Shown here in pieces: positions 42,030-55,219 of a stretch of DNA of 64,000 nt (positions are counted from its first letter, which is position 1; each line of letters starts with the position of its first letter). The notes under the pieces are model-generated. The model did no database searches. It saw only the letters and a program-made list of their open reading frames with translations, and was not told where the DNA came from. Source of the DNA: Thecamonas trahens ATCC 50062 (Eukaryota > Protista > Apusomonadida); contig NW_013657667.1 of assembly GCF_000142905.1 (NCBI RefSeq), forward strand, positions 254,801-318,800, written 5' to 3'. The translations under genes and the position numbers were made by a program.

Positions 42030-42364
42030 GCGATACACACCAGCTGCATGCAGCTAACTGCCTCCCTCTCTCTTTCTCTCTCTCTCACTTCCCCCCCCCC
42101 CCCCCCCTTCCCTGGCTCAAGACTCGCCGGTTACTTCCTCCTCTTCTCTGGTCAACGGTAGATAGCTACGCCTGGCACTCCTGGCTCCGATGCGTTATCA
42201 TCATCAACATGTTAGAAAAAAGGGCCGAGCATGCGCCACCAACAAGAGTTCTCGTACGTTTTCCTTCGTCCCCCCCCCCCCCCCCCCCGTCCCTTCAACA
42301 CACACATGCACGCTCCCCCACCACTCCTCCCCCCCCCCTCCCACCTCACTCTCACTTCTTCCCC

Positions 42365-44191
42365 ATGTCCATGTCATCTACCCTTGCCCTCACTCCCGCC
42401 GTGGCCGTCGTCTTTGTCCTCGCCCTTGCTGCGCAGGCCACGGCAGCTTCCCTCGACCCAGCGTACTACGACGGGACAGCAAGCTTTGCTTCAGGCGACT
42501 ACGTGCTGTACTGGAAAGTGCACGCCACGTCGGTGGAGATTGCTCTGGATGCTGCGACGACCGGATGGGTTGGCTTTGGTCTCTCGGAGCCGACGTCGGG
42601 CTCCATGCCGGGCTCAGACATGGTGGTGGCGTCGGTCGACGGCTCGTCGGGGGTCGTCACAGTTCGCGACATGCACGCGCTGGGCTTCTCTACGCCGACC
42701 GAGGACGCCGCGTGCTCCGACTGGGTCATTGTCAACGGCTACGAGGCAGGTGGGCGGACGGTAGTTGAGCTTGTCCGCGCCAAGGAGACCGGCTCGCCGC
42801 AGGATCGTCCCTTTGTCGAGGGCAACATGCATGTGGTGTGGGCGTTTGGGAGCTCAGACACGCTGACGTACCACGGTGCCAACCGCGCCACGAACCAGGT
42901 CACCTTTTGGGGTGAGAGCTACGTCCGTCCGGTCGGTCTCACCACCCTTGAGCTCCGCCACGCTGATTTTCCGGTTCCGTCCATCAAAACCCACTACGAG
43001 GAGACGCTCTTTGCGCTCCCCAACGATCGGCCGTATCATCTTGTCGAAATCGAGCCTGTCATTGTCCAGCCCAAGTACGTCCATCACATGGTGTTCTACT
43101 TTTGCACCGGGCCCACGCTCGGTGAGTGCTGGGACCTTGTGGGCGCCTGGGCCGTCGGCGGGCCGTCGACTGTCACTCCCGAAGTCGCGGGCTTCCGCTT
43201 CGGTGCAGGCACCACCATCACCCACCTCCGCATCCAGTTCCACTATGACAACCCGACCAACACTCCGGGTGTGACTGACTCGTCCGGCGTCCGCATCCAC
43301 TACACTGACATCCTTCGCGAGCACGACGCCGGCGTCCTCTGGATCGGCGATCCGGCCGTCCGGCTCCCGGCCATCCCGGCCGGCGAGGCCGCCTTTCACT
43401 ACGAGACAACGTGCCCATCGGAGTGCACATCTCGCTGGACGCAGCCTCTCAACGTCTTCACCGTCTTCCTCCACATGCACTCGGTCGGCAAGACCATTTG
43501 GACAACTGTCCATCGCGCCGGCGAGCGCGTGCCCGAGGCCGAGGATCGCATTGAGTTCTGGGACTTCAACCACCAGCAACTGACCACCGTCAACTACACT
43601 CTCCAACCTGGTGACGAGATCAACGTCCACGGCGTGTTTGACACCACCGGCAAGTCGGCTCCCGTGGTCTTTGGCACCGCCTCCGACGAGGAGATGCTCA
43701 TGAGCTTCCTCTCTTACTATCCTGCCCAGACCGGCATTTGGCAGTGTGGCTACTTTCCCAGCGCCTCGGACCCGAACAACACCGACTGGACGCTCTGCCA
43801 GTCCGACGTTCTCGACATCCGCCAGCCCAAGGTCGCCGACCCGCCCGGCGGCGAGATCATCACCTTTGGCGCCACGCCCGGCACCTGCGCTCCGCTCGCC
43901 ACCATTCCGCCATCCCGCCCGCAAACAACCTCGTCGCCGGCAGCCTCCCCTCCACCGCCGCCGTCTACCTCGACCCCGACCTCGACTGCCGCCGCCACCC
44001 AAGGCTCGTCCTCACCATCGGGATTCTCGTCGTCGACCGGCATGCTGATCGCCGCCGGTGTCGGCGGCTTTGTCATCATTCTCTTCCTTGTCGGCGGCGT
44101 TGCCGCCTTTCTGAAGTTCCGGTCCTCGTCCTCCTCGACTGCCGGCACAAACGCAGACGCTAAGAACGCCGTCGCTCTCGAAGCCATTTGA
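42365..44191 (+). CDS. DOMON + copper type II ascorbate-dependent monooxygenase (MOXD1/DBH-like), type I membrane protein
   Basis: Signal peptide; DOMON motif GWVGFGLS...MPGSDMVV; Cu ligands VHHM, QFHY, LHMH and EEM; Ser/Thr/Pro stalk; C-terminal TM helix. Confidence 0.9.
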   Translation: MSMSSTLALTPAVAVVFVLALAAQATAASLDPAYYDGTASFASGDYVLYWKVHATSVEIALDAATTGWVGFGLSEPTSGSMPGSDMVVASVDGSSGVVTVRDMHALGFSTPTEDAACSDWVIVNGYEAGGRTVVELVRAKETGSPQDRPFVEGNMHVVWAFGSSDTLTYHGANRATNQVTFWGESYVRPVGLTTLELRHADFPVPSIKTHYEETLFALPNDRPYHLVEIEPVIVQPKYVHHMVFYFCTGPTLGECWDLVGAWAVGGPSTVTPEVAGFRFGAGTTITHLRIQFHYDNPTNTPGVTDSSGVRIHYTDILREHDAGVLWIGDPAVRLPAIPAGEAAFHYETTCPSECTSRWTQPLNVFTVFLHMHSVGKTIWTTVHRAGERVPEAEDRIEFWDFNHQQLTTVNYTLQPGDEINVHGVFDTTGKSAPVVFGTASDEEMLMSFLSYYPAQTGIWQCGYFPSASDPNNTDWTLCQSDVLDIRQPKVADPPGGEIITFGATPGTCAPLATIPPSRPQTTSSPAASPPPPPSTSTPTSTAAATQGSSSPSGFSSSTGMLIAAGVGGFVIILFLVGGVAAFLKFRSSSSSTAGTNADAKNAVALEAI

Positions 44192-44370
44192 TCAAATTCT
44201 ACCTCTGAGAAATAAATTCTCCACCGCACGCGCAGCACCGGCTGAACGACAACTCGGTGGCGCCAGGCCTCTTCCTCCCCGTTTCAACCACTCTTCGCGC
44301 GCCCCCCCCCCTCCCCTCCCACCTCTCTTCCACCAAGGCACCTCTTCTCCCTTGCCAAACACTTGAGAGG

Positions 44371-47300
44371 ATGCCTGGCCACCTTTGGGTTCTGCTGCTT
44401 GCTGCGGCTGTTGCTTGCGCGACGCTTGCCTCTGCTGCAAGCTACAGACCACCAACACCGGGTACCGAGGCAGTGAGGCCAACCACGTTCAACGTGACCT
44501 TCACCTTGCCACCTGCTGTAGAGGACGTAGTCTTTATCTCGGTCAACGTGAGCAAGTTTGTCGCTCCTGGAGTCTTTGCCAACTTCCCTTCCAAGCTCCT
44601 TGCCGTTGCCGAGCTTGGACAGCCCGAGTCGCCGGTGTGGACAGTGTACGAGTCGGTCGACGCTTCAGCTGACTACGTTGTCGTCCTGGTTGCCGTCTTT
44701 GCCGATGGCTCGACTTCAGAGCCCTCGGAGGTCTCTTTTTACGAGTCGCCGGCTCCAGAGGCCCCCGACTCGCCCACCGGCCTTGCCTCTTCGGCGGTCG
44801 CTCCCGACTCGGCCGAGCTATCCTGGGACGCGCCGTACGACGGCGGCGCAGCCATCACCGACTACAACATTGTCCTCACCGCACTCGATCCGCCCGACGC
44901 ACCATCTCCAGCTCTCTTCTCGACTACCGGCGCCACAACGACGCTGGTCTCGTCGCTCTCGTCGTACACACAGTACGAAGCAACTGTGACCGCCACCTCG
45001 TCTGCTGGCACCTCGCCGCCGTCGCCGCCGCTGGTCTTTCGCACTCGCCCAGCTGCTGCTGACCCTGTCGTGGATGCCTACGTCACCGCCACGTCCCACT
45101 ACACTGCAAGCCTCGAAGTAGCCATCCCGCGTTCGTACGGCACACCTGTCGTGGCACTTCTCTTCTCCGCTGAGCCCGGCGCCCATCACCAGTGGCTTAA
45201 CTTTACCGAGTCACTCCCGCAGGGCGACGTTGTTGCTGCCACGCTCATCGGGCTTGAGCCCTCGACCAACTACGCCATCCAGATCCAGGCGCTCGCCGAA
45301 GGTGCGGAGCTCTCGACACCGGCGCCGCCACCGGCGCTCACTGCGCGGACTGCGGACCCCGCAGCTCCCGACAGCGTTGGGTGCCTCGTTGATCTGAGCG
45401 TCATCAATGCAACTGCTGTTGCGCTCACCTGGACTGCACCTTATGACTCGGGTGCGGCCATCACCAGCTATGAAGTCTCGGCCGTGCCAACCGTCGCGAC
45501 TTCGGCCGGTAAGCCGACGTCCACGATCACGGTTGCGGTTCCTGGCGCCACCAACTCGGAAGTGGTTGGAAGTCTTCTCCCGGCCACGCCGTATGAGCTA
45601 TATGTGGTGGCAATCAACCCCCAGGGCACATCGCCACCTCCGCCATGCCTCAACGCCACCACGACCCTGGCTGGTCCGCCCGACCCCGTTGCCTGCGGTT
45701 CGATCGTAGTGACGCCAGTTTCGGACACCCAGCTCGACGTTGCCTGGGTCGCACCGTCCGATGCCGGCTCGACCATCACCAACTACACCGTTGTCTACAC
45801 CCATCTCGACAGCGGCGGCACGCCTGATGGCGAGTCGATGAACGTGGTGGTCTCTGCGTCGCCGGCTGCCCTCGCTGGGCTCGGACGGTACACCGACGTC
45901 GGAGTTACGGTGACCGCCACCAACTCAGTGGGCAGCTCGCCGCCCTCGTGTCAAGTTGTCGCCACGACGCTGCCAGGATTCCCGGAGCCCACCGTGGGCG
46001 TTGCTGCTGTCGACGTCACCCGGTCATCTGCTCGCATCACTTGGTCGCCGATCGACGACAATGGCATGCCGCTGCTCAACACCACTATCTACGTCTTTGA
46101 GATGCAGGCGTTTAGCGCCGCGGCACCGCCGATCGAGCCGCACCTTACGCAGCCTGGCGGCGGGTCGCAGGCCCACGAGGCGCTGGAGAGCCTTGCTGCC
46201 GAAGTCTACATCGGCTCTGTGGCTGGCAACGGCATGGAGTTGGCGCTGCCTGCCTCTACACTCGAGCACAACACCCAGTACGGTGTGATAGTGCTCGGCG
46301 CCAACGCGGCCGGGCAGGCCTCGTTTGTCATCCCGCCGTTTGCCTTTCTCTCCGGGCCGGCCGAGCCCGAGAAACCGGATCGGGAGACTTTTGTGGCGAC
46401 TGCGGTCAACCCACGGACGTTGTCGCTGTTGTGGGATGCTCCGAATGACTCGGGCTCACCCATCGTTCAGTACGATGTCTTCCTCACCCGCATCTCGGAC
46501 TCGTTCGTCATTTCGGGCTCGTTCAACACGACGTCTGGGGTGGTGACTGGTCTCGAGGCCTCGACGGAGTATTTGGTGCAGGTCTTGGCAATCAACGCGG
46601 TTGGTTCGTCCGATCTATCGCACCCGCTGTACTGGCTGTCGCCCGAGGCGGTTGCGCCGTCCGCGGTTGACCCGACCTCGTTTTTCTCACTCTCGTCCAC
46701 CCGCTCATCGATCCATATCGGGTGGGCCGAGCCGTTTGACGGCGGCAGCCCAGTGAGCGACTACGTTGTCCTCGCGTACGACACGGTGACCGGAGCCAAG
46801 GTATACGACATGGCCGGTGACGCCTCGCTCTCGCGCAACATCACCGGGCTCTACGTCCACCGCGACTATGCTTTCATCGTTGCTGCTGTCAACAGCGTCG
46901 GCATTGGCGCCGCACCAGTCTATCCGCCCGACTCTACCGGGATGGCCATGACGGCGACCGGGCCACCGGATCCGGTTACGAGTATCCAGCTGTACGCTTA
47001 TCCGGCGGCGACGAGCCTCGAGACCTCGTCGCTGCTGCTGCTCGAGTGGCAGGGCCCCGACGACAACGGTTTTGACTTTACCACTGTTGAAGTCATGGTC
47101 TACGCTATGCCCGACGAGTCGCCTGTCGCCGGCTACCCGCAGCAGGCCAACGTGACCGCGAGTGGAGGTTCGGAAGCGCCGGTTGAGCTCGACGGCCTCA
47201 TGCCCGACTCCGAGTACGGCGTGCGCCTTGTCATTTACAACAAAGTCGGCGCCAGTCCGCCGTCAGACCTCGTTGTGAGCCGGACTGGACCGGGCGTGCC

Positions 47301-50300
47301 AAATCCACCGGACATGGTCAACGCGACCGCCGACGGCCCGCGCGGAATCCACATCTCGTGGTCGCCGCCGTTGTACACCGGCGGGGCGCCCATCGAGTTC
47401 TACACGGTTCACATCACCGGGACCGGAAACCATGACGACACCTTTACCATTGCCGGTGAAGTGACCACGCTGGATGTCTCCAGCCTCTGCATGGCCGGCG
47501 ACTACGAAGTCGAAGTCATTGCGGCCAACGCGGTGGCTAACTCGGCACCGTCGCCTGCTGTGGCAGTGAGCACACCCGGCGAGCCACCGTCGGTCGTGGC
47601 GACACTGTTGGTCACTGCGACAACACTCGACTCGGTGACCCTGCTATGGAACACGCCGCCGGGCGTGTGCAGCATGCCGGGTGTCTTTTCGCTCTTCCTC
47701 TCGGCTAACATGTCGGATCCGTCGCCGCCGTCCACTTTTGTGGCCAACATCTCCATTCCGACCACGTCGACGACGGTGGGCGATCTCGAGCCTGCTGCGT
47801 CGTACAAGTTTGCCATCCAGGTTGTCACTGACTATGGTGTTTCTCCTCTCTCCGCAGCCACTTCAGTGACGACCGGCTCGTTGCCGCCGGATGCCCCGAC
47901 TATTGTGGTGGCGATGCCAGAGCCGGCAGCGTACGCCGTGTCTGGACCTTATCTGCCGGTCACCACGAGTGTGGTGGTCAACATCACACTTCCGCTCTCC
48001 GACAACGGCTCGCCGGTGGTCGAGCTTGGGGTTGTGATCAACGGCTCTGAGGTTGTGCGGGTGCCGACCTCGAGCGGGCCGGGTGACGTGGTCTCTGTTG
48101 TCGTCGACGAGCTTGAACCCCACCAGATTGTGGCGGTTGCCGCGTTTGCATCGTCGGTCCTTGGCGACTCGGCGCTCTCCCCCACCACAGTGGTCACGAC
48201 GCTTCCAGGACCACCAGAGGCGCAGCCGGCGCCGCAAGCCATCACATCCGAGTCAACGTACACTTCGGTGACAGCGCACTGGGACGGCGTGGCAACCGGG
48301 TCGTCCCGAGGCCTGCCCATTGACCACGCCGTAGCTGTGGTTGCCAAGTCGTCGACCAACTTTTGGGCTTTTCCATTGTCACCTTGTCGCCCCCACTTCC
48401 ACTCGGTCCTCAGCCCATCGTCATTAGTGGGCTCAGTCCCGGGCGTGACTATCTGGTTGGGTTTGCTCTTGGATGCCTTAAGCCAGATGGTCAGGGTGAG
48501 TACCTGTACTCCTCGCTGAGCCTTGCTGAGCTATCGCCGGTGGCGACGACGCCACCGACAGTGCCCGACGTTGCCAGCTGCGCGACAAACGTCGAGGTCA
48601 TTGCTGCGCCCGGCAACGTCTCAGCCAGGGCCGAGGTCTCGTTTGTGCAAGCTGCTGAGAATGGATCACCCATTACTGTGGTCGAGATCGAGCTGACGCC
48701 TCTGAGTGGCTCGTTCGGCGATACCAAGCTGGTTGCGGCGGTGGGCATCGGGGCAGCCGATACCGCTGTGTCTGTCAATGACCTTGACGGCGCTACCGAG
48801 TACTCGTTGGCGCTGCGGTTTGGCAACGCCGAGGGCTTTGCGCCGTTTAACAACAGGTCGCTCTGTGCGACAGTGTCGAGCCCTCCGCTTGCGCCGCGGG
48901 CGCCGCTCGCTCCGCTTGTCAGCGTTGTCTCGTCGCAGGTGGTAGCGGCACGAGCGCAGGCGCTCCCGTCGTCGCAGGGCTCGCCAATCACGTCGGTTGT
49001 GCTCGTGGCGACAGGAACAAGCGGCAAGGCGCTGGGAACGAGCGTTCAGGTCGAGGTTGACGCGGCTCAAGCTGTGGCTACCACCGAGCACCTCGGCCGG
49101 CTGTTTGGCGGCGAGGACTACGAGGTAACAGCCCAGGCGCGCAACGCATACGGGCTCTCGCTCTCATCGCCGGCCGAGGTGGTCTCTTTGCCGCCGGGCG
49201 AGCCATGGCCAATCGAGTGCACCGACGGCGTGGTGAGCGACGTGACGCCGAGCTCGTTCCGGGCAGCCTGGCCGCCCACCGCCCACAACGGCGGCTTTCC
49301 GCTCGGAGGATACGACGTCGAAATTGTGGCCATGGCGACCGGCACCATGGTGTTTTCGGGAACGCTGACGGAACCGGTCTATCAGCTGAGCGGCCTCGAT
49401 GCCGGAAGTCAATTCAACATTAGCGTGGTGCCGTGGAACAGCGCCGGGAGTGCAGCCGGTTGTGCAATGGAGGCGAAGACTCTTGCACTTCCGCCACTCC
49501 CGCCGACCTCGGTGACGACGACGGTGGCCGATCTGTCCGCTGGACGAGTGCTGGTCACTTGGGCTCCGGCTGTCGAGCGCGGTGCGCCTGTGGTCGAGTA
49601 TCTTGTTCACGTGGAGCAAGGTGGCGTGATTGCGATCAACGAGACAGTGTCGGTTATGACCAACAGCGAGCCTGCGCTCAACATTACCGGATTGCAGCGC
49701 GGAGTGACGTACTCGCTGACGGTGTCTGCGGTGTCTGCGGCAGGTATCTCGTCGCCTTCGAACATATGGCTGTTTGGTGTCAGCCCGCTGGCGCCACAGC
49801 CGCTGGCATGCCCGTCTGTCACGCAAGTTGGTCCCAAAGCTGTGTTTGTAAGCTGGGCCGCAGCGGTGACCAACGGCGCGCCTGTGCTCGTCTACCGAGT
49901 CGAGGCGCGAGTCGATGCCGAGGCGACGTTCATTGTGCGAGCGAGAGTCAGCACGCTCAATGCGACACTGACGGATCTTGTGCCAGGCACGGTTTACAGC
50001 TTGCGGATTGTGGCCGAGTCGTCTGTGGGGCCGTCGTCGCCGTCGCTCTGCAGTTCTGGCGCGGGTCTGGCACTGCCTGCGACTGCACCCGAGCCGACGT
50101 CTGATGTGGATCCGCCCGAGATCGACGGCACGACGGTGGTGCTGCGGTGGAGTCCGGCACGGTCCAACGGCGAGCCGGTTTTGGAGTACCTGGTGCAAGT
50201 GTCACGCAACCTGCAGTTTGATCCGTCGTTCAACGTGTCTGTGACCGAGTCGCGGCGGCGCGCTCCGGATGCCCGAGTCGAGCTCACGACGCTGGCGGAG

Positions 50301-52420
50301 GAGACAACGTACCATGCTCGGATTGCGGCGATCAACTCGCTGGGCATGTCGCCGTTCTCGGATGTCATCACGTTTACAACGAACAAGCGGTCATCAACGT
50401 CATCTGCACAAAGCCCCAATAGCGAGTCGGGAACAACGTTCCTGGGTCTGGGCAGCACGCTGCTTTTCACCGTTGTTCTCGTCATCGCGCTCCTTGTCAT
50501 TCTGGTCCTCTGCTGCATTTGCTGCTGCAAGCGTAGCGGGGACGAGCAGGAAGGTGGGGCGTCCCAGTCGGGCATGGCAGCGCAAAGCGCTGCCGAGCGA
50601 GGCGAGGCTCGCGGCGTGGAGGACGACGATGATGATGACGACGACGACGAGGACGACGAGGCGTTGCGAAAGGCAATTCGCCAGGCCAAGAAGGCCAAGG
50701 ACTCAAGTCGGCCCCCTGCGCGCGCTGCAGACGACGGGTTTGGTGACGCTGTGGGCGACATTGAGCTCACTGGGATGGATGCCGGCGAGAGTGCTGGGCC
50801 GAGCGGACGCAGGTCTGCAGGTGGGCGCGGATCACGGCGCCACGAGCCGCGCGCGCCAGCTGGTTTTGTCGAGAATGATGATGACGACGACGACTCAGCG
50901 ATTGAGTTTTCAGAAGATGAGGCCCGGTCCGACGATGGCGGTGCGCTTGGTCCGGTGAGTAGTGGCGCAGCAGTTGCAGGCGCGCCGACCTCGGGCGCGT
51001 TTGCCTCGTTTGACGCTGTGTTTGGCGCTCCGGCCGGAGCGGCGGATCCGTTCTCCAGCCACGCGTTTGAAGCAGCGTTTGGCAACAGGGCGGGAGACGG
51101 TGACGACTCGTCAGTGCTGGACCAGTCGATGGCGCGCGAGTCGATGGGCAACGTGAGTGCGATGTCTCCTGGCAGCGGTGATCCGTGGGCGGCGGGAGTG
51201 CCAGTTTCGAATCCTGCATCTGGAGCGACGTCTCCGGTGTTTGATGCGGCGTTCCCTGCGATGAGTGGCGGGAGCGGGCTGGAGCCGCCGCAGCGCGGCG
51301 ACGACGACGCGTCGTCGGTGTTCACAGTCCCGCTGGGCGCTGGGTCGATGGTGGGCGGCGACGATGGGTCCGAGTCGATGGCGTCGTCAGGCGACGGTGG
51401 CCTCTTTTCCAAGGCCTTTTCGTCAGGTCCGGCGACGCGAGTGGAAGACGAGAGCTTCAATCCGTTTGACGGCGCGGCCGACGACGAGACTAGCGCGCTG
51501 GCTGGTTTTGGCTCGCCGGGCCTGGAGCTAACATCGATTGCGCCGGCGGTTTCGCCGCGGTGGGATTCGGCGCATGCCGAGCCTGTGGTCGTCCTTCCGA
51601 TGGTCCGCGAGCAGGGGACTGCGGTGTACACCGAGGGCACGCTAACACAGTACTCGCTCGGCGCCGAGGTGGCGTACGGTGTGCCCGACGCATCAGTCGA
51701 GGTTGCAAGCGGCGCGAGCTTCGCAGTCGTCCTTGGCAGCACGGCCCGGCATGAGCTGTTGCGGGTCGACGGCGCCGAGTTGGATGAGCTTGCGCAGGTC
51801 GGCACCGGACTTCCGTCTGGCAACGCTAGGGGCATCCACCGCTTCGGAGACGGGGCATGGCAGGTCGACGTGGCGCTGGCGGTGCCGCGGTCCGGCGGGC
51901 GGCCGATCTTCCGGCTTGGCACGTTCTCGCCGGACGCCTCTTTCGCACGCGTTCCTCTCAAGGCCGGGCTCAAGTACAAGCTCAAGCAGGACAGCGACGG
52001 CGGCGCGGTGCTGATGGCCGAGGTCTCTGTGGCGGTCGAGTCGTTCGCACCGACACAGGCGACCCTTGATCTGGTCATCTCAGGCGCGCGTCTCACGCCG
52101 GAACGTGTGGCCTCGCTCAAGTGCAAGCCGCCCGGCAACCTGACCCCGCTTGGCGAGGTCACCATTGCGCTCCCAGTCGAAAGCGGGAGCAAGCAAAGGT
52201 GCTTGTGCGCGCCAAGCTTGCCGAAGGTCAGGGCTTCTCGGGCATCGAAGATCTCAAACTCCGGGCCACGCTCAAGGGCTCGGGCGCCTCGCTGCTCGAC
52301 CTCGGCGGCCCACACGGCGTCGGTGCCCTCATCTCGGCCCAGCCGGGCGTGACGGTCTCGGACTCGGAGGCCTTCCGGGCTCTTACCTTTGAGGCCAGTG
52401 TCGACGGTCGGCTTTTGTAG
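44371..52420 (+). CDS. Giant single-pass fibronectin type III repeat protein (~18 FN3) with an endocytic-motif tail and C-terminal mu-homology-like domain; apparent frameshifts at 48361-48364 and 52195-52197
   Basis: Signal peptide MPGHLWVLLLAAAVAC. Repeated W-x-A/P-P-x-D/N-x-G-x-P/A-I-x-x-Y and L-x-P-x-T-x-Y...A-x-N-x-x-G motifs. TM LLFTVVLVIALLVILVLCCICCC (~50460-50530). Acidic tail, then a beta-rich final domain. ORFs 44257, 48363 and 52121 join by two -1 shifts. Confidence 0.85.
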
Positions 52421-52537
52421 CCTCGAATTGTCGGTAAAGAAGCTTTTGAATGCACATGATGGCCTGGCTCCCGTCGTCCCCCGTCAACTCGGCGAGGCAG
52501 AGTCATCAGTTGCAGCACTACTCTCGCATTTCCCACC

Positions 52538-55219
52538 ATGGGTATGTTTTGCCACCTTTCCGCTGGCCGCTCCCCCACCACCACCCCGCCACCCATTGTC
52601 GCCTCGCGTCCCCTCCCTCCCCCCCCTCCCCCCCCCTGCGCGCTCTCTTTCTTTATCCCCCTCTTCAGTCTGCTTACCCCACCGTAGCCCCATTCCTATG
52701 CCTACAGCCTAGCCTAGCTGATGCGCCTACTGCATTGCGCAACGCATGGGCGTTTGGGAACACTCTTAGCCATTCTCGGCTCCCCCCTCTCTCTCACACA
52801 CACTCTCGCGCTCACACACTCCCCCCCCCCCCCCCCCCCTTCCCCATCCTCCTTCAATCCAACAGCTGCGTCTGCTGACGATTCGGACCACAACATGTCG
52901 CACACGCCCGAGCCGGGCTCATACTCGGACAACGACGCCACAGGTGCGTCGTCGGATCCGGACGGTGAGCGGTCGGACTCGTCGGATGATGACGGCCCTT
53001 CGTCGGAGCGTGCATCGCGGACGGGGCACAACACAGCGGCACCGTCGTTGGCAGATCTTGAGGCGGACGACTCGGATGCTGCGCTGCTGGCCGCCATCCG
53101 CATGCCGGAGATCAACGATGGCGAGGAGCTTCGGTCGGGCTTTTACACGGTCAACCCGTTCCTGCCCGAGTACTCGCCCGAGGGCGACGCGCAACTGATG
53201 GCGCAGGCGCTGGGCCTTGTCAAAGGCAAGAAGAAGAACGAGCTGCTGCTGGTGGATCTGCTGACGACACGCGAGCCGGACCAGGTGCAGGCGGCGCGCG
53301 CGGTGTTCAACGCGAGCAACAAGCACCCGCTGGCAAAGATGGTGAAGAAGAAGACGCGGTCGTCGTTCAAGCGGCTGATGTGCGGACTGGTTCTCTCACC
53401 GGCCGAGTATGATGCGCAGCAGATCATGTCGTCGGTCTCGGGCGTGGGGACCAAGGAGAGTGTGCTCATCGACATTCTGACGACGCGCTCGAACGCGCAG
53501 ATCGAGGCCATCAACCAGGAGCTGCTGCGGACGGTTTCCAAGGACCTGGTGCGGGTGATCAAGGGCGCGACCGGCGGCAAGTTCAAGAAGATCGTGGCCA
53601 AGCTTGCCGAGGGCAACCGCGAGGAGTTCCACGATCTCAATCCCGACCTTGTTCATAGCGACGCACTTGCCATTTTCGACGCGATTGAGAAAAAGTCAGG
53701 CTGCGACGAGAAGGCGCTGGTCGGCATTTTTGCCGTCCGGCCGGCCCACCACCTCAAGGCTGTTGTCCGCCACTACCGCAAGGTGACGCAGCTTGTCCAC
53801 CGTCGTGGGCAGTCGGCTACCCACCACTTTGACATGCTGTTGGAGAAGAAGACGTCGGGCGACTTTCGGCGGACGATCAAGGCGCTCATTGCGCCTGAGG
53901 AGTACCTCGCCGAGTGCGTGCGGAACGCGGTCAAGGGACTGGGGACAGATGACTCGCTGCTGCGGCGCACCATGCTCGGAGCGCGGCTGACGCCGCTGCG
54001 GCTGCACCTAGCCAAGCACGCGTACTTCCGGCTTTTCAAGCGGGCGTTGGTCAAGGACATCGAGGACGACACCCGTGGCAACTACCGGCGGGCGTACCGT
54101 CGTATCGCGGCTACCCACACCGGCAACATGCTAGCAGTCAAGCTCCGCGAGGCGATGCACCACTCGTTCCGCGGTATCGGCGCAAGCAAGGCCAAGATCA
54201 CGCACGTCCTCACCGAGGCGGCTGTCAACGCTCGCGAGCGGGCCGACGTCGCCGACGCGTACGTCCTCGACTACGGGCGCAAGCTCTCCAAGTCGCTCAA
54301 GTCGTCACTCTCCAAGCATCACGCCCGGTTCCTCATCACACTCTCAACCCGGCGGGCGGCCGTCGACGCCGAGACCGTGAAAAAGTGCAAGAAAGCACAG
54401 CTCATCGACATCTTTACCACCAGGCGAAGCGTGGAGCTGAAGCGACTCGCGGAGGAGTTTGAGCGGATGTACACCAAGCCGCTGGAGGAGTTCCTCACCA
54501 AAAAGCTGTCGGGCAAGTTCCGCAAGGTCATTCTCAACCTGCTTGACGCCAAGCGTACTGTCGGGCTCACCATTTCTGAGGCCAAGGCCGACGAGCTTGC
54601 GCAGCAGCTTTACGGTGCTGGCGAGAAGAAGTGGGGGACCAACACCGACGTGTTTGTCAACATCATGGCGCGGCACTCACCGCAGGATCTGACCGCCGTC
54701 GATCTTGCGTACGAGCGCCTGCGCCAGAAGCGGCTGACGGTGGCCATCAAGAAGGAGTTCTCTGGCGACACTCGCAAGCTGCTCATGGCGTGCGTCGACC
54801 CGATTAACTACACCTGCGACCGGCTGATGGCGTCGATGAAGGGCCTCGGGACCGACGACCGCGAGCTCGTGCGCCTGCTTGCACACCGGCCCAAGGCCGA
54901 GATCGAGGCCATCAAGGCCGCGTTTGAGGTCAAGTTTAAGAAGTCGCTCGCGCGCTGGATCAAGGGCGACACCTCGGGCTACTACCGCAAGGCTCTGCTC
55001 TCGTACATTGCCGACATTTCTCTTGCGCCGGTCGACAAGGACGCCGACGACGACGAGGACAACGAGGCCACCGGCTCTGGCGACGGCCTCGGCGGCGAAG
55101 ACGATGGTGACGACGACTGGGAAGGCAACCCCGACCGCCCGCCACCGACCTTCCACGACGACTACGACGACGGCGCGTCGTCGTCGGCCACGCCGATGCG
55201 CCCGCCGCCGGCCTTCTAG
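52538..55219 (+). CDS. Eight-repeat (double-core) annexin; probable 4-nt first coding exon 52538-52541 and intron 52542-52865
   Basis: Annexin repeats GVGTKESVLIDILTTRSNAQI, KGLGTDDSLL, YGAGEKKWGTNTDVF and MKGLGTDDRELVRLL...IKGDTSGYY. ATG G|GTATGT...CTCAC...CAG|CT restores the frame (MAASADDSDH...). Alternative start ATG 52895. Confidence 0.9.

What the first reader, a model, noticed from the sequence alone, without database searches (positions are those of the whole stretch)
44371..52420. Giant FN3 cell-surface receptor fused to its own endocytic adaptor module (DPF/DPW/NPF tail plus muniscin-like mu-homology domain)
Seen: a signal peptide, about 18 FN3 repeats and one TM helix ending in a CCICCC cluster. 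In the same uninterrupted frame (48363-52197) follows a ~350-aa acidic low-complexity tail with DDGFGD, FASFDAVF, ADPF, FEAAF, GDPW, FDAAF and FNPF. From ~51580 comes a ~280-aa beta-rich domain (PVVVLPMVREQGTAVYTEGTLTQYSLGAEVAY...LKAGLKYKLK...SLKCKPPG...KVLVRAKLAEG...LRATLKGSGASL). Established: DPF/DPW bind the AP-2 alpha ear, NPF binds EH domains, and Fxx(x)F motifs bind adaptor ears. FCHo/Syp1/SGIP1/TCUP mu-homology domains begin P-V-x-x-x-x-x-E-x-x-x-A-x-F/Y and end with L-x-A-R-F...G-S-x-L-S, and they normally sit in cytosolic proteins. Inference: this is a transmembrane receptor or adhesin that nucleates its own coated pit, an architecture I do not know from any described protein. It could serve prey or substrate capture, or gliding adhesion turnover.
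Basis: partly seen in the sequence, partly recalled or inferred. Interest (0 to 1): 0.85.

Follow-up and report, generated by a model that had tools for sequence, protein, structure and literature searches.

The report
Giant FN3 receptor with adaptor-like tail
This is one real 2,683-residue surface protein of the gliding protist Thecamonas trahens, with about 18 fibronectin-III repeats outside the cell and a cytoplasmic tail rich in endocytosis-type motifs; the claim that its unique end domain is an adaptor "mu-homology" domain could be neither confirmed nor refuted.

Summary
Window 44371-52420 (+) is one gene of Thecamonas trahens ATCC 50062, public model AMSG_03554, annotated as hypothetical. 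Both apparent frameshifts are homopolymer assembly errors: independent contigs add a T after 48360 and an A after 52194. The corrected protein has 2,683 aa: signal peptide, 17-20 FN3 repeats, one TM helix ending CCICCC, a 351-aa acidic disordered tail, and a 279-aa beta-rich C-terminal domain.

The tail motifs exceed what its composition predicts. DPF/DPW/NPF occur 3 times against 0.18 expected (P about 0.0007). F[DE]A[AV]F occurs 3 times against 0.006 expected.

The key inference, a muniscin-like mu-homology domain, has no tool support:
- Pfam gives no hit at E<=10.
- phmmer against 1.84 billion representatives finds only the protein itself.
- There is no PDB hit and no paralogue in the genome.
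- hhalign against the organism's own five mu-homology domains gives probability <=1%.
- AlphaFold2 without an alignment fails (pLDDT 34.7).

These tests are insensitive, so the idea is unproven rather than refuted. I put it at about 0.2.

The best reading is an FN3 adhesin or receptor that carries its own AP-2/EH-type sorting motifs and an orphan cytosolic domain. The scan holds only this same reading of this same stretch (s1-756543).

The parts
44371..44439 (+). Start codon and signal peptide (aa 1-23, MPGHLWVLLLAAAVACATLASAA)
   Evidence: Hydropathy peak at the N-terminus. The public model P0001 has the same start.
44440..50453 (+). Ectodomain (aa 24-2028): 17 clear FN3 repeats plus 2-3 divergent FN3-like gaps, with 25 N-x-S/T sequons
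   Evidence: Pfam fn3 E 1.4e-84 and 2.6e-45, and 15 stretches on P0001. Self-built HMM finds 17 units. Sequon count.
48360..48361 (.). Assembly indel: one T missing from a T-run, which makes the apparent frameshift inside an FN3 repeat
   Evidence: read laying puts a T behind 48360 in 4 of 4 runs. Local sequence CTTTTG.
50454..50528 (+). Single transmembrane helix (aa 2029-2053) ending in CCICCC, a likely palmitoylation cluster, followed by KR
   Evidence: Kyte-Doolittle 19-residue window up to 3.57. Coordinates checked.
50529..51581 (+). 351-aa acidic, A/G/S/D-rich disordered cytoplasmic tail (aa 2054-2404)
   Evidence: Composition: 59 A, 50 G, 47 S, 46 D, 17 F, 2 W. No Pfam family. No paralogue in the genome.
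50622..50660 (+). Poly-acidic run DDDDDDDDDEDDE, followed by a basic patch RKAIRQAKKAK
51009..51023 (+). FDAVF, first copy of the recurring F[DE]A[AV]F motif (within FASFDAVF)
51045..51053 (+). DPF motif
51066..51080 (+). FEAAF, second F[DE]A[AV]F copy
51180..51188 (+). DPW motif
51240..51254 (+). FDAAF, third F[DE]A[AV]F copy
51405..51419 (+). FSKAF, a further F-x-x-x-F
51459..51467 (+). NPF motif (ESFNPFDGAADDE)
51582..52417 (+). 279-aa C-terminal globular, mostly beta-rich domain (aa 2405-2683). It is an orphan at the sequence level and its fold is unresolved.
   Evidence: Only a self hit among 1.84e9 representatives. No Pfam hit and no PDB hit. No paralogue. Coding GC3 signature. The low-confidence AF2 model shows mainly strands.
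52194..52195 (.). Assembly indel: one A missing from an A-run, which makes the apparent frameshift inside the C-terminal domain
   Evidence: read laying puts an A behind 52194 in the one contig that covers it. Local sequence CAAAGG. The GC3 pattern continues in the shifted frame.
52418..52497 (+). Stop codon TAG (52418-52420) and the downstream stretch as far as contigs reach, a possible 3' UTR
   Evidence: Sequence. Run X1 contig 4 ends at 52497, and none of the four runs covers 52568-52900.

Best explanation
AMSG_03554 is a lineage-restricted, heavily glycosylated type I surface adhesin or receptor of the gliding, bacterivorous flagellate Thecamonas trahens. Its rod of about 18 FN3 repeats projects from the plasma membrane. 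A palmitoylatable CCICCC cluster ends the single TM helix. Its 630-aa cytoplasmic part behaves like the motif-rich tail of an endocytic accessory protein. One DPF, one DPW, one NPF and four to five F-x-x-x-F motifs (three of them F[D/E]A[A/V]F) sit in an acidic disordered region. There they can engage the AP-2 alpha appendage and EH-domain proteins, so the protein most likely recruits the clathrin/AP-2 (or TSET) machinery to itself. That would let it be internalised and recycled, for example to turn over adhesion sites or to bring in bound particles. The terminal 279-aa beta-rich domain is a folded module of unknown fold that adds a further, still unidentified, cytosolic interaction. Shown here: gene continuity, topology features, FN3 identity, motif enrichment, orphan status of the end domain, and presence of the candidate partners in the genome. 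Inferred: motif binding, endocytic function, and any role of the end domain.
For: There is one ORF after two read-supported homopolymer corrections. FN3 is confirmed by Pfam and a self-built HMM. Signal peptide, TM helix, KR-inside rule and the 25 vs 2 sequon asymmetry fit a type I topology. The tail motifs are enriched over shuffles: DPF|DPW|NPF P 0.0007, F[DE]A[AV]F 3 vs 0.006, F...F P 0.005. The T. trahens genome encodes AP-2 alpha with PF02296/PF02883 appendage domains and at least eight EH-domain loci over the Pfam cut-off. That DPF/DPW and FxDxF-type motifs bind the alpha appendage, and that NPF binds EH domains, is established knowledge and was not tested here. The end domain is coding (GC3 0.78-0.80), non-repetitive and hydrophobic-patterned, so it is likely folded.
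Against: There is only one copy each of DPF, DPW and NPF, whereas true accessory proteins usually carry many. The motif set was chosen after seeing the sequence. No orthologue is available, so motif conservation cannot be checked. F[DE]A[AV]F is not a described adaptor motif; the acidic residue sits one position earlier than in FxDxF. Whether the four runs are RNA is not on record, so expression is not proven.
Confidence: 0.5

Rival explanations
1. The C-terminal 279 aa are a highly divergent mu-homology domain of the TCUP/muniscin type. The protein is then a membrane-anchored muniscin analogue, with the TM helix in place of F-BAR, followed by a motif-rich linker and a muHD, and it seeds its own coated pit.
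For: The architecture is muniscin-like: a long disordered, motif-rich linker followed by a beta-rich domain of about 280 aa at the extreme C-terminus. Apusomonads are the sister group of opisthokonts, where muniscins are proposed to have arisen by translocation of the TSET muHD-coding sequence (PMC4031984). T. trahens has no PF10291 hit anywhere and no F-BAR protein with room for a muHD among the six long ones checked. An unchecked first-stage note reports a TCUP with a muHD in this genome (s1-746993). My Pfam and profile searches did not see it, so Pfam silence is weak evidence in this organism. The best local hhalign match, though not significant, falls on the canonical V-x-I-x-I-P-x-P strand.
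Against: No PF10291 or PF00928 hit at E<=10. hhalign probability is 0.2-1% against the organism's own five muHDs. The profile search of the genome does not return the domain. There are no PDB sequence hits. The AF2 model is unusable.
Confidence: 0.2
2. It is a gliding or substrate adhesin whose acidic, aromatic-studded tail and terminal domain couple it to the cortical cytoskeleton or motor system, as the acidic tails of apicomplexan TRAP/MIC2 adhesins do, rather than to endocytic coats.
For: T. trahens glides on surfaces. The protein is a long FN3 rod with an acidic tail containing Trp and Phe. The end domain is an orphan with no adaptor signature.
Against: No cytoskeleton-binding domain or motif was detected. 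The DPF/DPW/NPF combination is characteristic of endocytic ligands. No data on localisation exist. A literature search found nothing on this protein.
Confidence: 0.15
3. It is a signalling receptor processed by regulated proteolysis. The released intracellular part (basic NLS-like patch RKAIRQAKKAK, an acidic and aromatic region resembling an activation domain, and a beta-rich end domain) would act in the nucleus or cytosol.
For: The tail has 20% D+E with 17 Phe and 2 Trp embedded in acidic context, and a basic patch just after the poly-Asp run.
Against: No DNA-binding or signalling domain was found by Pfam. No cleavage-site evidence exists. This rests on composition alone.
Confidence: 0.07
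4. It is an artefact: a pseudogene broken by two frameshifts, or two neighbouring genes read as one.
For: The assembly as given has two frame breaks. The public gene model had to invent two introns.
Against: Independent contigs restore the frame at both sites, and both are homopolymers. The coding GC3 signature continues across the breaks. There are no stop codons in 8,052 nt. Contigs tile 47500-52497 without joints.
Confidence: 0.03

Closest known systems
Muniscins (FCHo1/2, SGIP1, yeast Syp1) and the TSET subunit TCUP/TML
   Same: A long disordered linker with adaptor-binding motifs is followed by a beta-rich domain of about 270-280 aa at the extreme C-terminus. Both are attached to the plasma membrane.
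   Different: This protein is anchored by a TM helix behind a 2,000-aa FN3 ectodomain instead of an F-BAR, MP or longin module. It has no Pfam muHD or Adap_comp_sub signal, and its fold is unverified.
Endocytic accessory proteins with motif-rich disordered regions (Eps15, epsin, AP180-type)
   Same: An acidic or small-residue disordered region carries DPF, DPW, NPF and F-x-x-x-F motifs, enriched over chance.
   Different: Those proteins are soluble and carry many motif copies. Here there is one copy each of DPF, DPW and NPF, and the motifs sit on a transmembrane protein.
Metazoan FN3-rich type I receptors and adhesion molecules (DSCAM/sidekick/receptor-phosphatase-like ectodomains)
   Same: Signal peptide, tandem FN3 array, a single TM helix and a cytoplasmic tail. 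Pfam also reports FN3_DSCAM-DSCAML_C-type repeats.
   Different: There are no Ig domains and no kinase or phosphatase domain. The cytoplasmic part is unrelated to any of them. The FN3 similarity is at the level of the repeat family only.
Apicomplexan gliding adhesins (TRAP/MIC2 family)
   Same: A type I adhesin of a gliding protist with an acidic cytoplasmic tail containing aromatic residues.
   Different: The ectodomain modules are unrelated (TSR/vWA against FN3). The tail here is about 10 times longer and ends in a folded domain.

Membership tests
Muniscin/TCUP mu-homology domain (Pfam PF10291; clan with PF00928) | Significant match to the muHD or Adap_comp_sub profile | tested here: not met
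   No hit at E<=10 for 51552-52196, 52196-52417, 51402-52196 or the public model P0001. HMMER filters drop matches above about E 0.1-0.3, so very weak similarity is not excluded.
Muniscin/TCUP mu-homology domain (Pfam PF10291; clan with PF00928) | Two-subdomain all-beta sandwich fold superposable on solved muHD structures | tested here: inconclusive
   AF2 on the 215-aa piece without an alignment gave mean pLDDT 34.7 and pTM 0.28. No fold search was run on it because the model is meaningless. No homologues exist to build an alignment.
Muniscin/TCUP mu-homology domain (Pfam PF10291; clan with PF00928) | Detectable profile similarity to other muHDs of the same organism | tested here: not met
   hhalign probability 0.2% and 0.95%. 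A profile of the five own muHDs finds only those five in the genome.
Muniscin/TCUP mu-homology domain (Pfam PF10291; clan with PF00928) | Position at the extreme C-terminus after a long disordered linker | tested here: met
   A 351-aa disordered tail is followed by a 279-aa domain that ends at the stop codon.
Muniscin/TCUP mu-homology domain (Pfam PF10291; clan with PF00928) | Binds DPF-type motifs of Eps15/Ede1-like proteins or cargo | not testable with these tools
This needs biochemistry.
Muniscins proper (FCHo/Syp1) | N-terminal F-BAR (FCH) domain | tested here: not met
   No FCH hit in the protein. The N-terminal part is a signal peptide plus an FN3 ectodomain.
Fibronectin type III repeat proteins (PF00041) | Multiple significant fn3 profile matches | tested here: met
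   E 4.4e-122 with 15 stretches on P0001. 17 units found with a self-built HMM.
Type I single-pass membrane glycoprotein | Cleavable N-terminal signal peptide, one TM helix, positive-inside flank, glycosylation sequons confined to the N-terminal side | tested here: met
   Hydropathy peaks only at aa 5 and aa 2022-2039. KR follows CCICCC. Sequons number 25 against 2. No dedicated predictor was available.
AP-2 alpha-appendage / EH-domain ligands | DP[FW], FxDxF or WxxF motifs, and NPF, in a disordered region | tested here: met
   DPF, DPW and NPF are present and enriched (P 0.0007). There is no FxDxF or WxxF, but F[DE]A[AV]F occurs 3 times.
AP-2 alpha-appendage / EH-domain ligands | Actual binding to the appendage or EH domain | not testable with these tools

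The most novel reading that the evidence does not exclude
The orphan C-terminal domain is a strongly diverged TCUP/muniscin-type mu-homology domain. Thecamonas would then carry a transmembrane muniscin analogue: an adhesion receptor fused to a coat-nucleating module. This would be a second, independent relocation of the TSET muHD in the sister lineage of opisthokonts, and the first known membrane-spanning muHD protein.
Probability: 0.2. Interest if true: 0.85.

Novelty: new variant of a known kind. Interest (0 to 1): 0.5.

Why it matters
FN3 surface receptors are common. A transmembrane protein whose own 350-aa tail looks like that of a soluble endocytic accessory protein, and which ends in a folded domain with no detectable relative among 1.84 billion representative proteins, is not. 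It sits in an apusomonad, the closest outgroup to animals and fungi, where the transition from the TSET complex to muniscins is thought to have happened (PMC4031984). If the end domain proves to be a mu-homology domain, it would show that this module was mobile before or beside the F-BAR fusion. It would also give a natural example of cargo that builds its own coat. If not, the protein still offers a tractable candidate for how a gliding phagotroph turns over its adhesion sites. A practical point: the public model AMSG_03554 is wrong at two places because of assembly indels.

Tried and rejected
1. A small intron at 48337-48413 or before 52198 as the cause of the frame changes. I rejected this because the contigs show single-base insertions and no joints.

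2. Word-based homologue search of the 215-aa piece found nothing. It sees only proteins of 118-376 aa.

3. phmmer of the same piece against 1.84e9 representatives found only the protein itself, plus four repetitive chance hits, P0002-P0005. An orthologue more than 50% identical could be hidden inside P0001's 50% cluster. The 90% cluster has one member.

4. Two JGI metagenome scans, with the C-domain and with the last FN3 plus TM, found no relatives.

5. AF2 on a single sequence was unusable. I did not run fold search on it. I did not use the second AF2 job with a mixed alignment of the query and known muHDs, because a positive result would be produced by the alignment itself.

6. hhalign and MAFFT against the organism's own muHDs gave nothing significant, and the block pairings were inconsistent.

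7. Weak own-genome candidates were both chance matches: L039 is a NOMO-like luminal protein and L038 is a low-complexity protein.

8. L027 is only a small sigma-like longin protein.

9. Six long F-BAR proteins were screened for a muniscin-like C-terminus and none qualified.

10. Complex prediction (alpha-ear with tail aa 2204-2246) was not available, so there is no verdict.

12. The Pfam FAM176 hit at the TM plus acidic region (E 0.033) is below cut-off and was ignored.

13. I considered a FFAT-like reading of SFDAVF/VFDAAF and rejected it, because the key aromatic position is S, V or A.

Joined step left out: the corrected domain joined across the 52194 indel has no reference. It was therefore never handed to Pfam, PDB, AF2 or the big searches, and its two pieces were searched apart. 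I built the joined protein only inside my own scripts, for coordinates, composition, motif statistics and one hhalign run.

Full report
**What is there.** The window is from Thecamonas trahens ATCC 50062. The protein found by phmmer, P0001, is AMSG_03554 / XP_013759901.1 / A0A0L0D4G7, annotated as 'hypothetical / fibronectin type-III domain-containing protein'. A full-text search finds no paper that names it.

On the + strand two long ORFs, 44257-48519 and 48363-52352, overlap in different frames. The last 74 codons before TAG 52418-20 are in a third frame. I laid the Logan contigs of four public runs of the same organism on 47500-52900. They put a T behind 48360 in all four runs and an A behind 52194 in the only contig that covers it. 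They show no joints, and they tile 47500-52497 without a gap in the path.

Both sites are homopolymer runs. The codon-position GC signature (GC1 0.72-0.73, GC2 0.49-0.50, GC3 0.78-0.80) continues in the shifted frame after 52194. The frame breaks are therefore assembly errors.

The public gene model hides them as two invented introns. It loses about 20 residues of an FN3 repeat and 14 residues (VESGSKQKVLVRAK) of the end domain. The corrected ORF, 44371-52420, encodes 2,683 aa. The runs' library type is not on record. Their size (about 9 Mb of contigs each) and the end of cover at 52497 suggest RNA, but I do not count this as proof of expression.

**Anatomy.**
- Signal peptide: aa 1-23.
- Ectodomain: aa 24-2028, with 17 clear FN3 units and 2-3 divergent gaps (Pfam fn3 E 4.4e-122 on P0001). 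It carries 25 N-glycosylation sequons against 2 in the cytosolic part.
- TM helix: a single helix, aa 2029-2053, ending CCICCC then KR.
- Disordered tail: 351 aa, rich in A, G, S and D (aa 2054-2404). It has a D9-E-DD-E run and a basic patch.
- Tail motifs: FDAVF, DPF, FEAAF, DPW, FDAAF, FSKAF and NPF.
- End domain: 279 aa (aa 2405-2683) of ordinary globular composition, predicted mostly as strands even in the poor AF2 model.

**Are the motifs more than chance?** I compared the tail with composition-preserving shuffles. DPF|DPW|NPF occurs 3 times against 0.18 expected (P 0.0007). F...F occurs 4 times against 0.77 (P 0.005). F[DE]A[AV]F occurs 3 times against 0.006. The motif list was chosen after seeing the sequence, so these numbers are optimistic. 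The recurrence of F-[D/E]-A-[A/V]-F is nevertheless hard to dismiss. It has the Phe-Phe spacing of the alpha-ear ligand FxDxF but a shifted acidic residue, and it is not a described motif.

The presumed partners exist. The genome encodes AP-2 alpha with both appendage Pfam domains and many EH-domain proteins.

**Is the end domain a mu-homology domain?** Every test I could run was negative or void.
- Pfam gives no family at E<=10 for either piece, for a longer piece, or for P0001.
- phmmer against 1.84 billion representatives returns only P0001 and four repetitive chance hits.
- The PDB sequence search returns nothing relevant.
- The genome has no paralogue of the tail or of either piece of the domain. 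The two weak candidates are a NOMO-like protein and a low-complexity protein.
- The genome's bona fide mu-homology domains are three AP mu subunits, AP-5 mu and delta-COP. A profile of these five finds only themselves. hhalign against the domain gives probability 0.2% and 0.95%.
- AlphaFold2 on the 215-aa piece, necessarily without an alignment, gave pLDDT 34.7. I therefore ran no fold search.

This shows how easily such matches arise in beta-rich sequence.

On the other hand, these tests are weak for one orphan sequence. The domain had to be searched in two pieces. An earlier, unchecked note of this scan reports a TCUP with a mu-homology domain in this genome (s1-746993). My Pfam and profile searches did not see it either. 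Silence of Pfam in this organism is therefore not strong evidence. I put the mu-homology reading at about 0.2.

**Context.** Hirst et al. propose that muniscins arose in ancestral opisthokonts when the TSET muHD-coding sequence moved behind an F-BAR (PMC4031984). FCHO homologues fall into holozoan and fungal clades only (PMC4824007). In line with this, T. trahens has no PF10291 match, and none of six long F-BAR proteins has a muniscin-like C-terminus. A relative of T. trahens exists in Tara Oceans assemblies (AP-2 alpha 73% identical). No relative of this gene was found in the representative library or in JGI metagenomes. An orthologue more than 50% identical could be hidden by the 50% clustering.

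**Most likely function.** I read the protein as an FN3 adhesin or receptor that carries its own coat-recruiting tail. The disordered region presents DPF/DPW/FxxxF ligands for the AP-2 alpha appendage (or TSET/AP ears generally) and NPF for EH-domain scaffolds. The protein would then concentrate in, or help stabilise, endocytic sites and be recycled. That would suit adhesion turnover or particle uptake in a gliding phagotroph. The end domain adds an unknown interaction.

Rivals are:
- a true mu-homology fusion (0.2);
- a cytoskeleton-coupled gliding adhesin (0.15);
- a proteolytically released signalling tail with an acidic activation-like region (0.07);
- an artefact or pseudogene (0.03, largely refuted).

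**Limits.** The corrected, joined C-terminal domain has no reference. It was not given to Pfam, PDB, AF2 or the large searches, and its two pieces were searched apart. The ESM Atlas was busy at every attempt.

**Verdict.** It is a new variant of a known kind, namely an FN3 type I receptor with an accessory-protein-like tail and an orphan domain. Interest 0.5. It would rise to about 0.85 if a confident model shows a mu-homology fold.

Noticed in passing
window 48360 and 52194: The assembly lacks one T and one A in homopolymer runs. The public gene model AMSG_03554 (P0001, 2,649 aa) bridges both with invented introns and so lacks 34 residues. Other genes of this assembly may carry the same kind of error.
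   Followed up: yes
window 47530, 47546, 48195, 48944, 48992, 50714, 51680: Single-base differences between the contigs and the window. Some appear in only part of the runs of one sample (for example 48195 C>T in X1 and X2 but not X3), which suggests allelic variation in the culture.
   Followed up: no
window 42209-44188 (+): The upstream neighbour, 180 bp before the FN3 gene's ATG, is a DOMON plus copper type II ascorbate-dependent monooxygenase (DBH/MOXD1-like) with a C-terminal TM-like region.
   Followed up: partly
window 52721-55216 (+): The downstream neighbour is an annexin with eight annexin repeats (Pfam E 1.8e-94). A C/T-rich low-complexity stretch at 52540-52720 is not covered by any of the four runs.
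   Followed up: no
G000 whole genome (L002-L006): Six-frame searches find only five mu-homology proteins: three AP mu subunits, AP-5 mu (L006) and delta-COP (L005).
   Followed up: partly
L037 (ENA ERZ908065, Tara Oceans contig k127_183364): A marine metagenome contig encodes an AP-2 alpha 73% identical to that of T. trahens. A fairly close uncultured relative is therefore present in public assemblies and could supply orthologues of this gene.
   Followed up: partly
L053, L054, L056 (G000 C20, C36, C5): T. trahens has at least 14 FCH/F-BAR loci with unusual partners: F-BAR+PH (1,369 aa), F-BAR+PH+C2+RasGAP (1,151 aa), and an ORF over the C5 FCH match that in the full Pfam scan shows only a DnaJ domain (921 aa).
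   Followed up: no
L039 (G000:C30:125478-128915, - strand): A NOMO-like protein with many transthyretin-like or CarboxypepD_reg beta-sandwich repeats. It surfaced only as a chance weak match.
   Followed up: no
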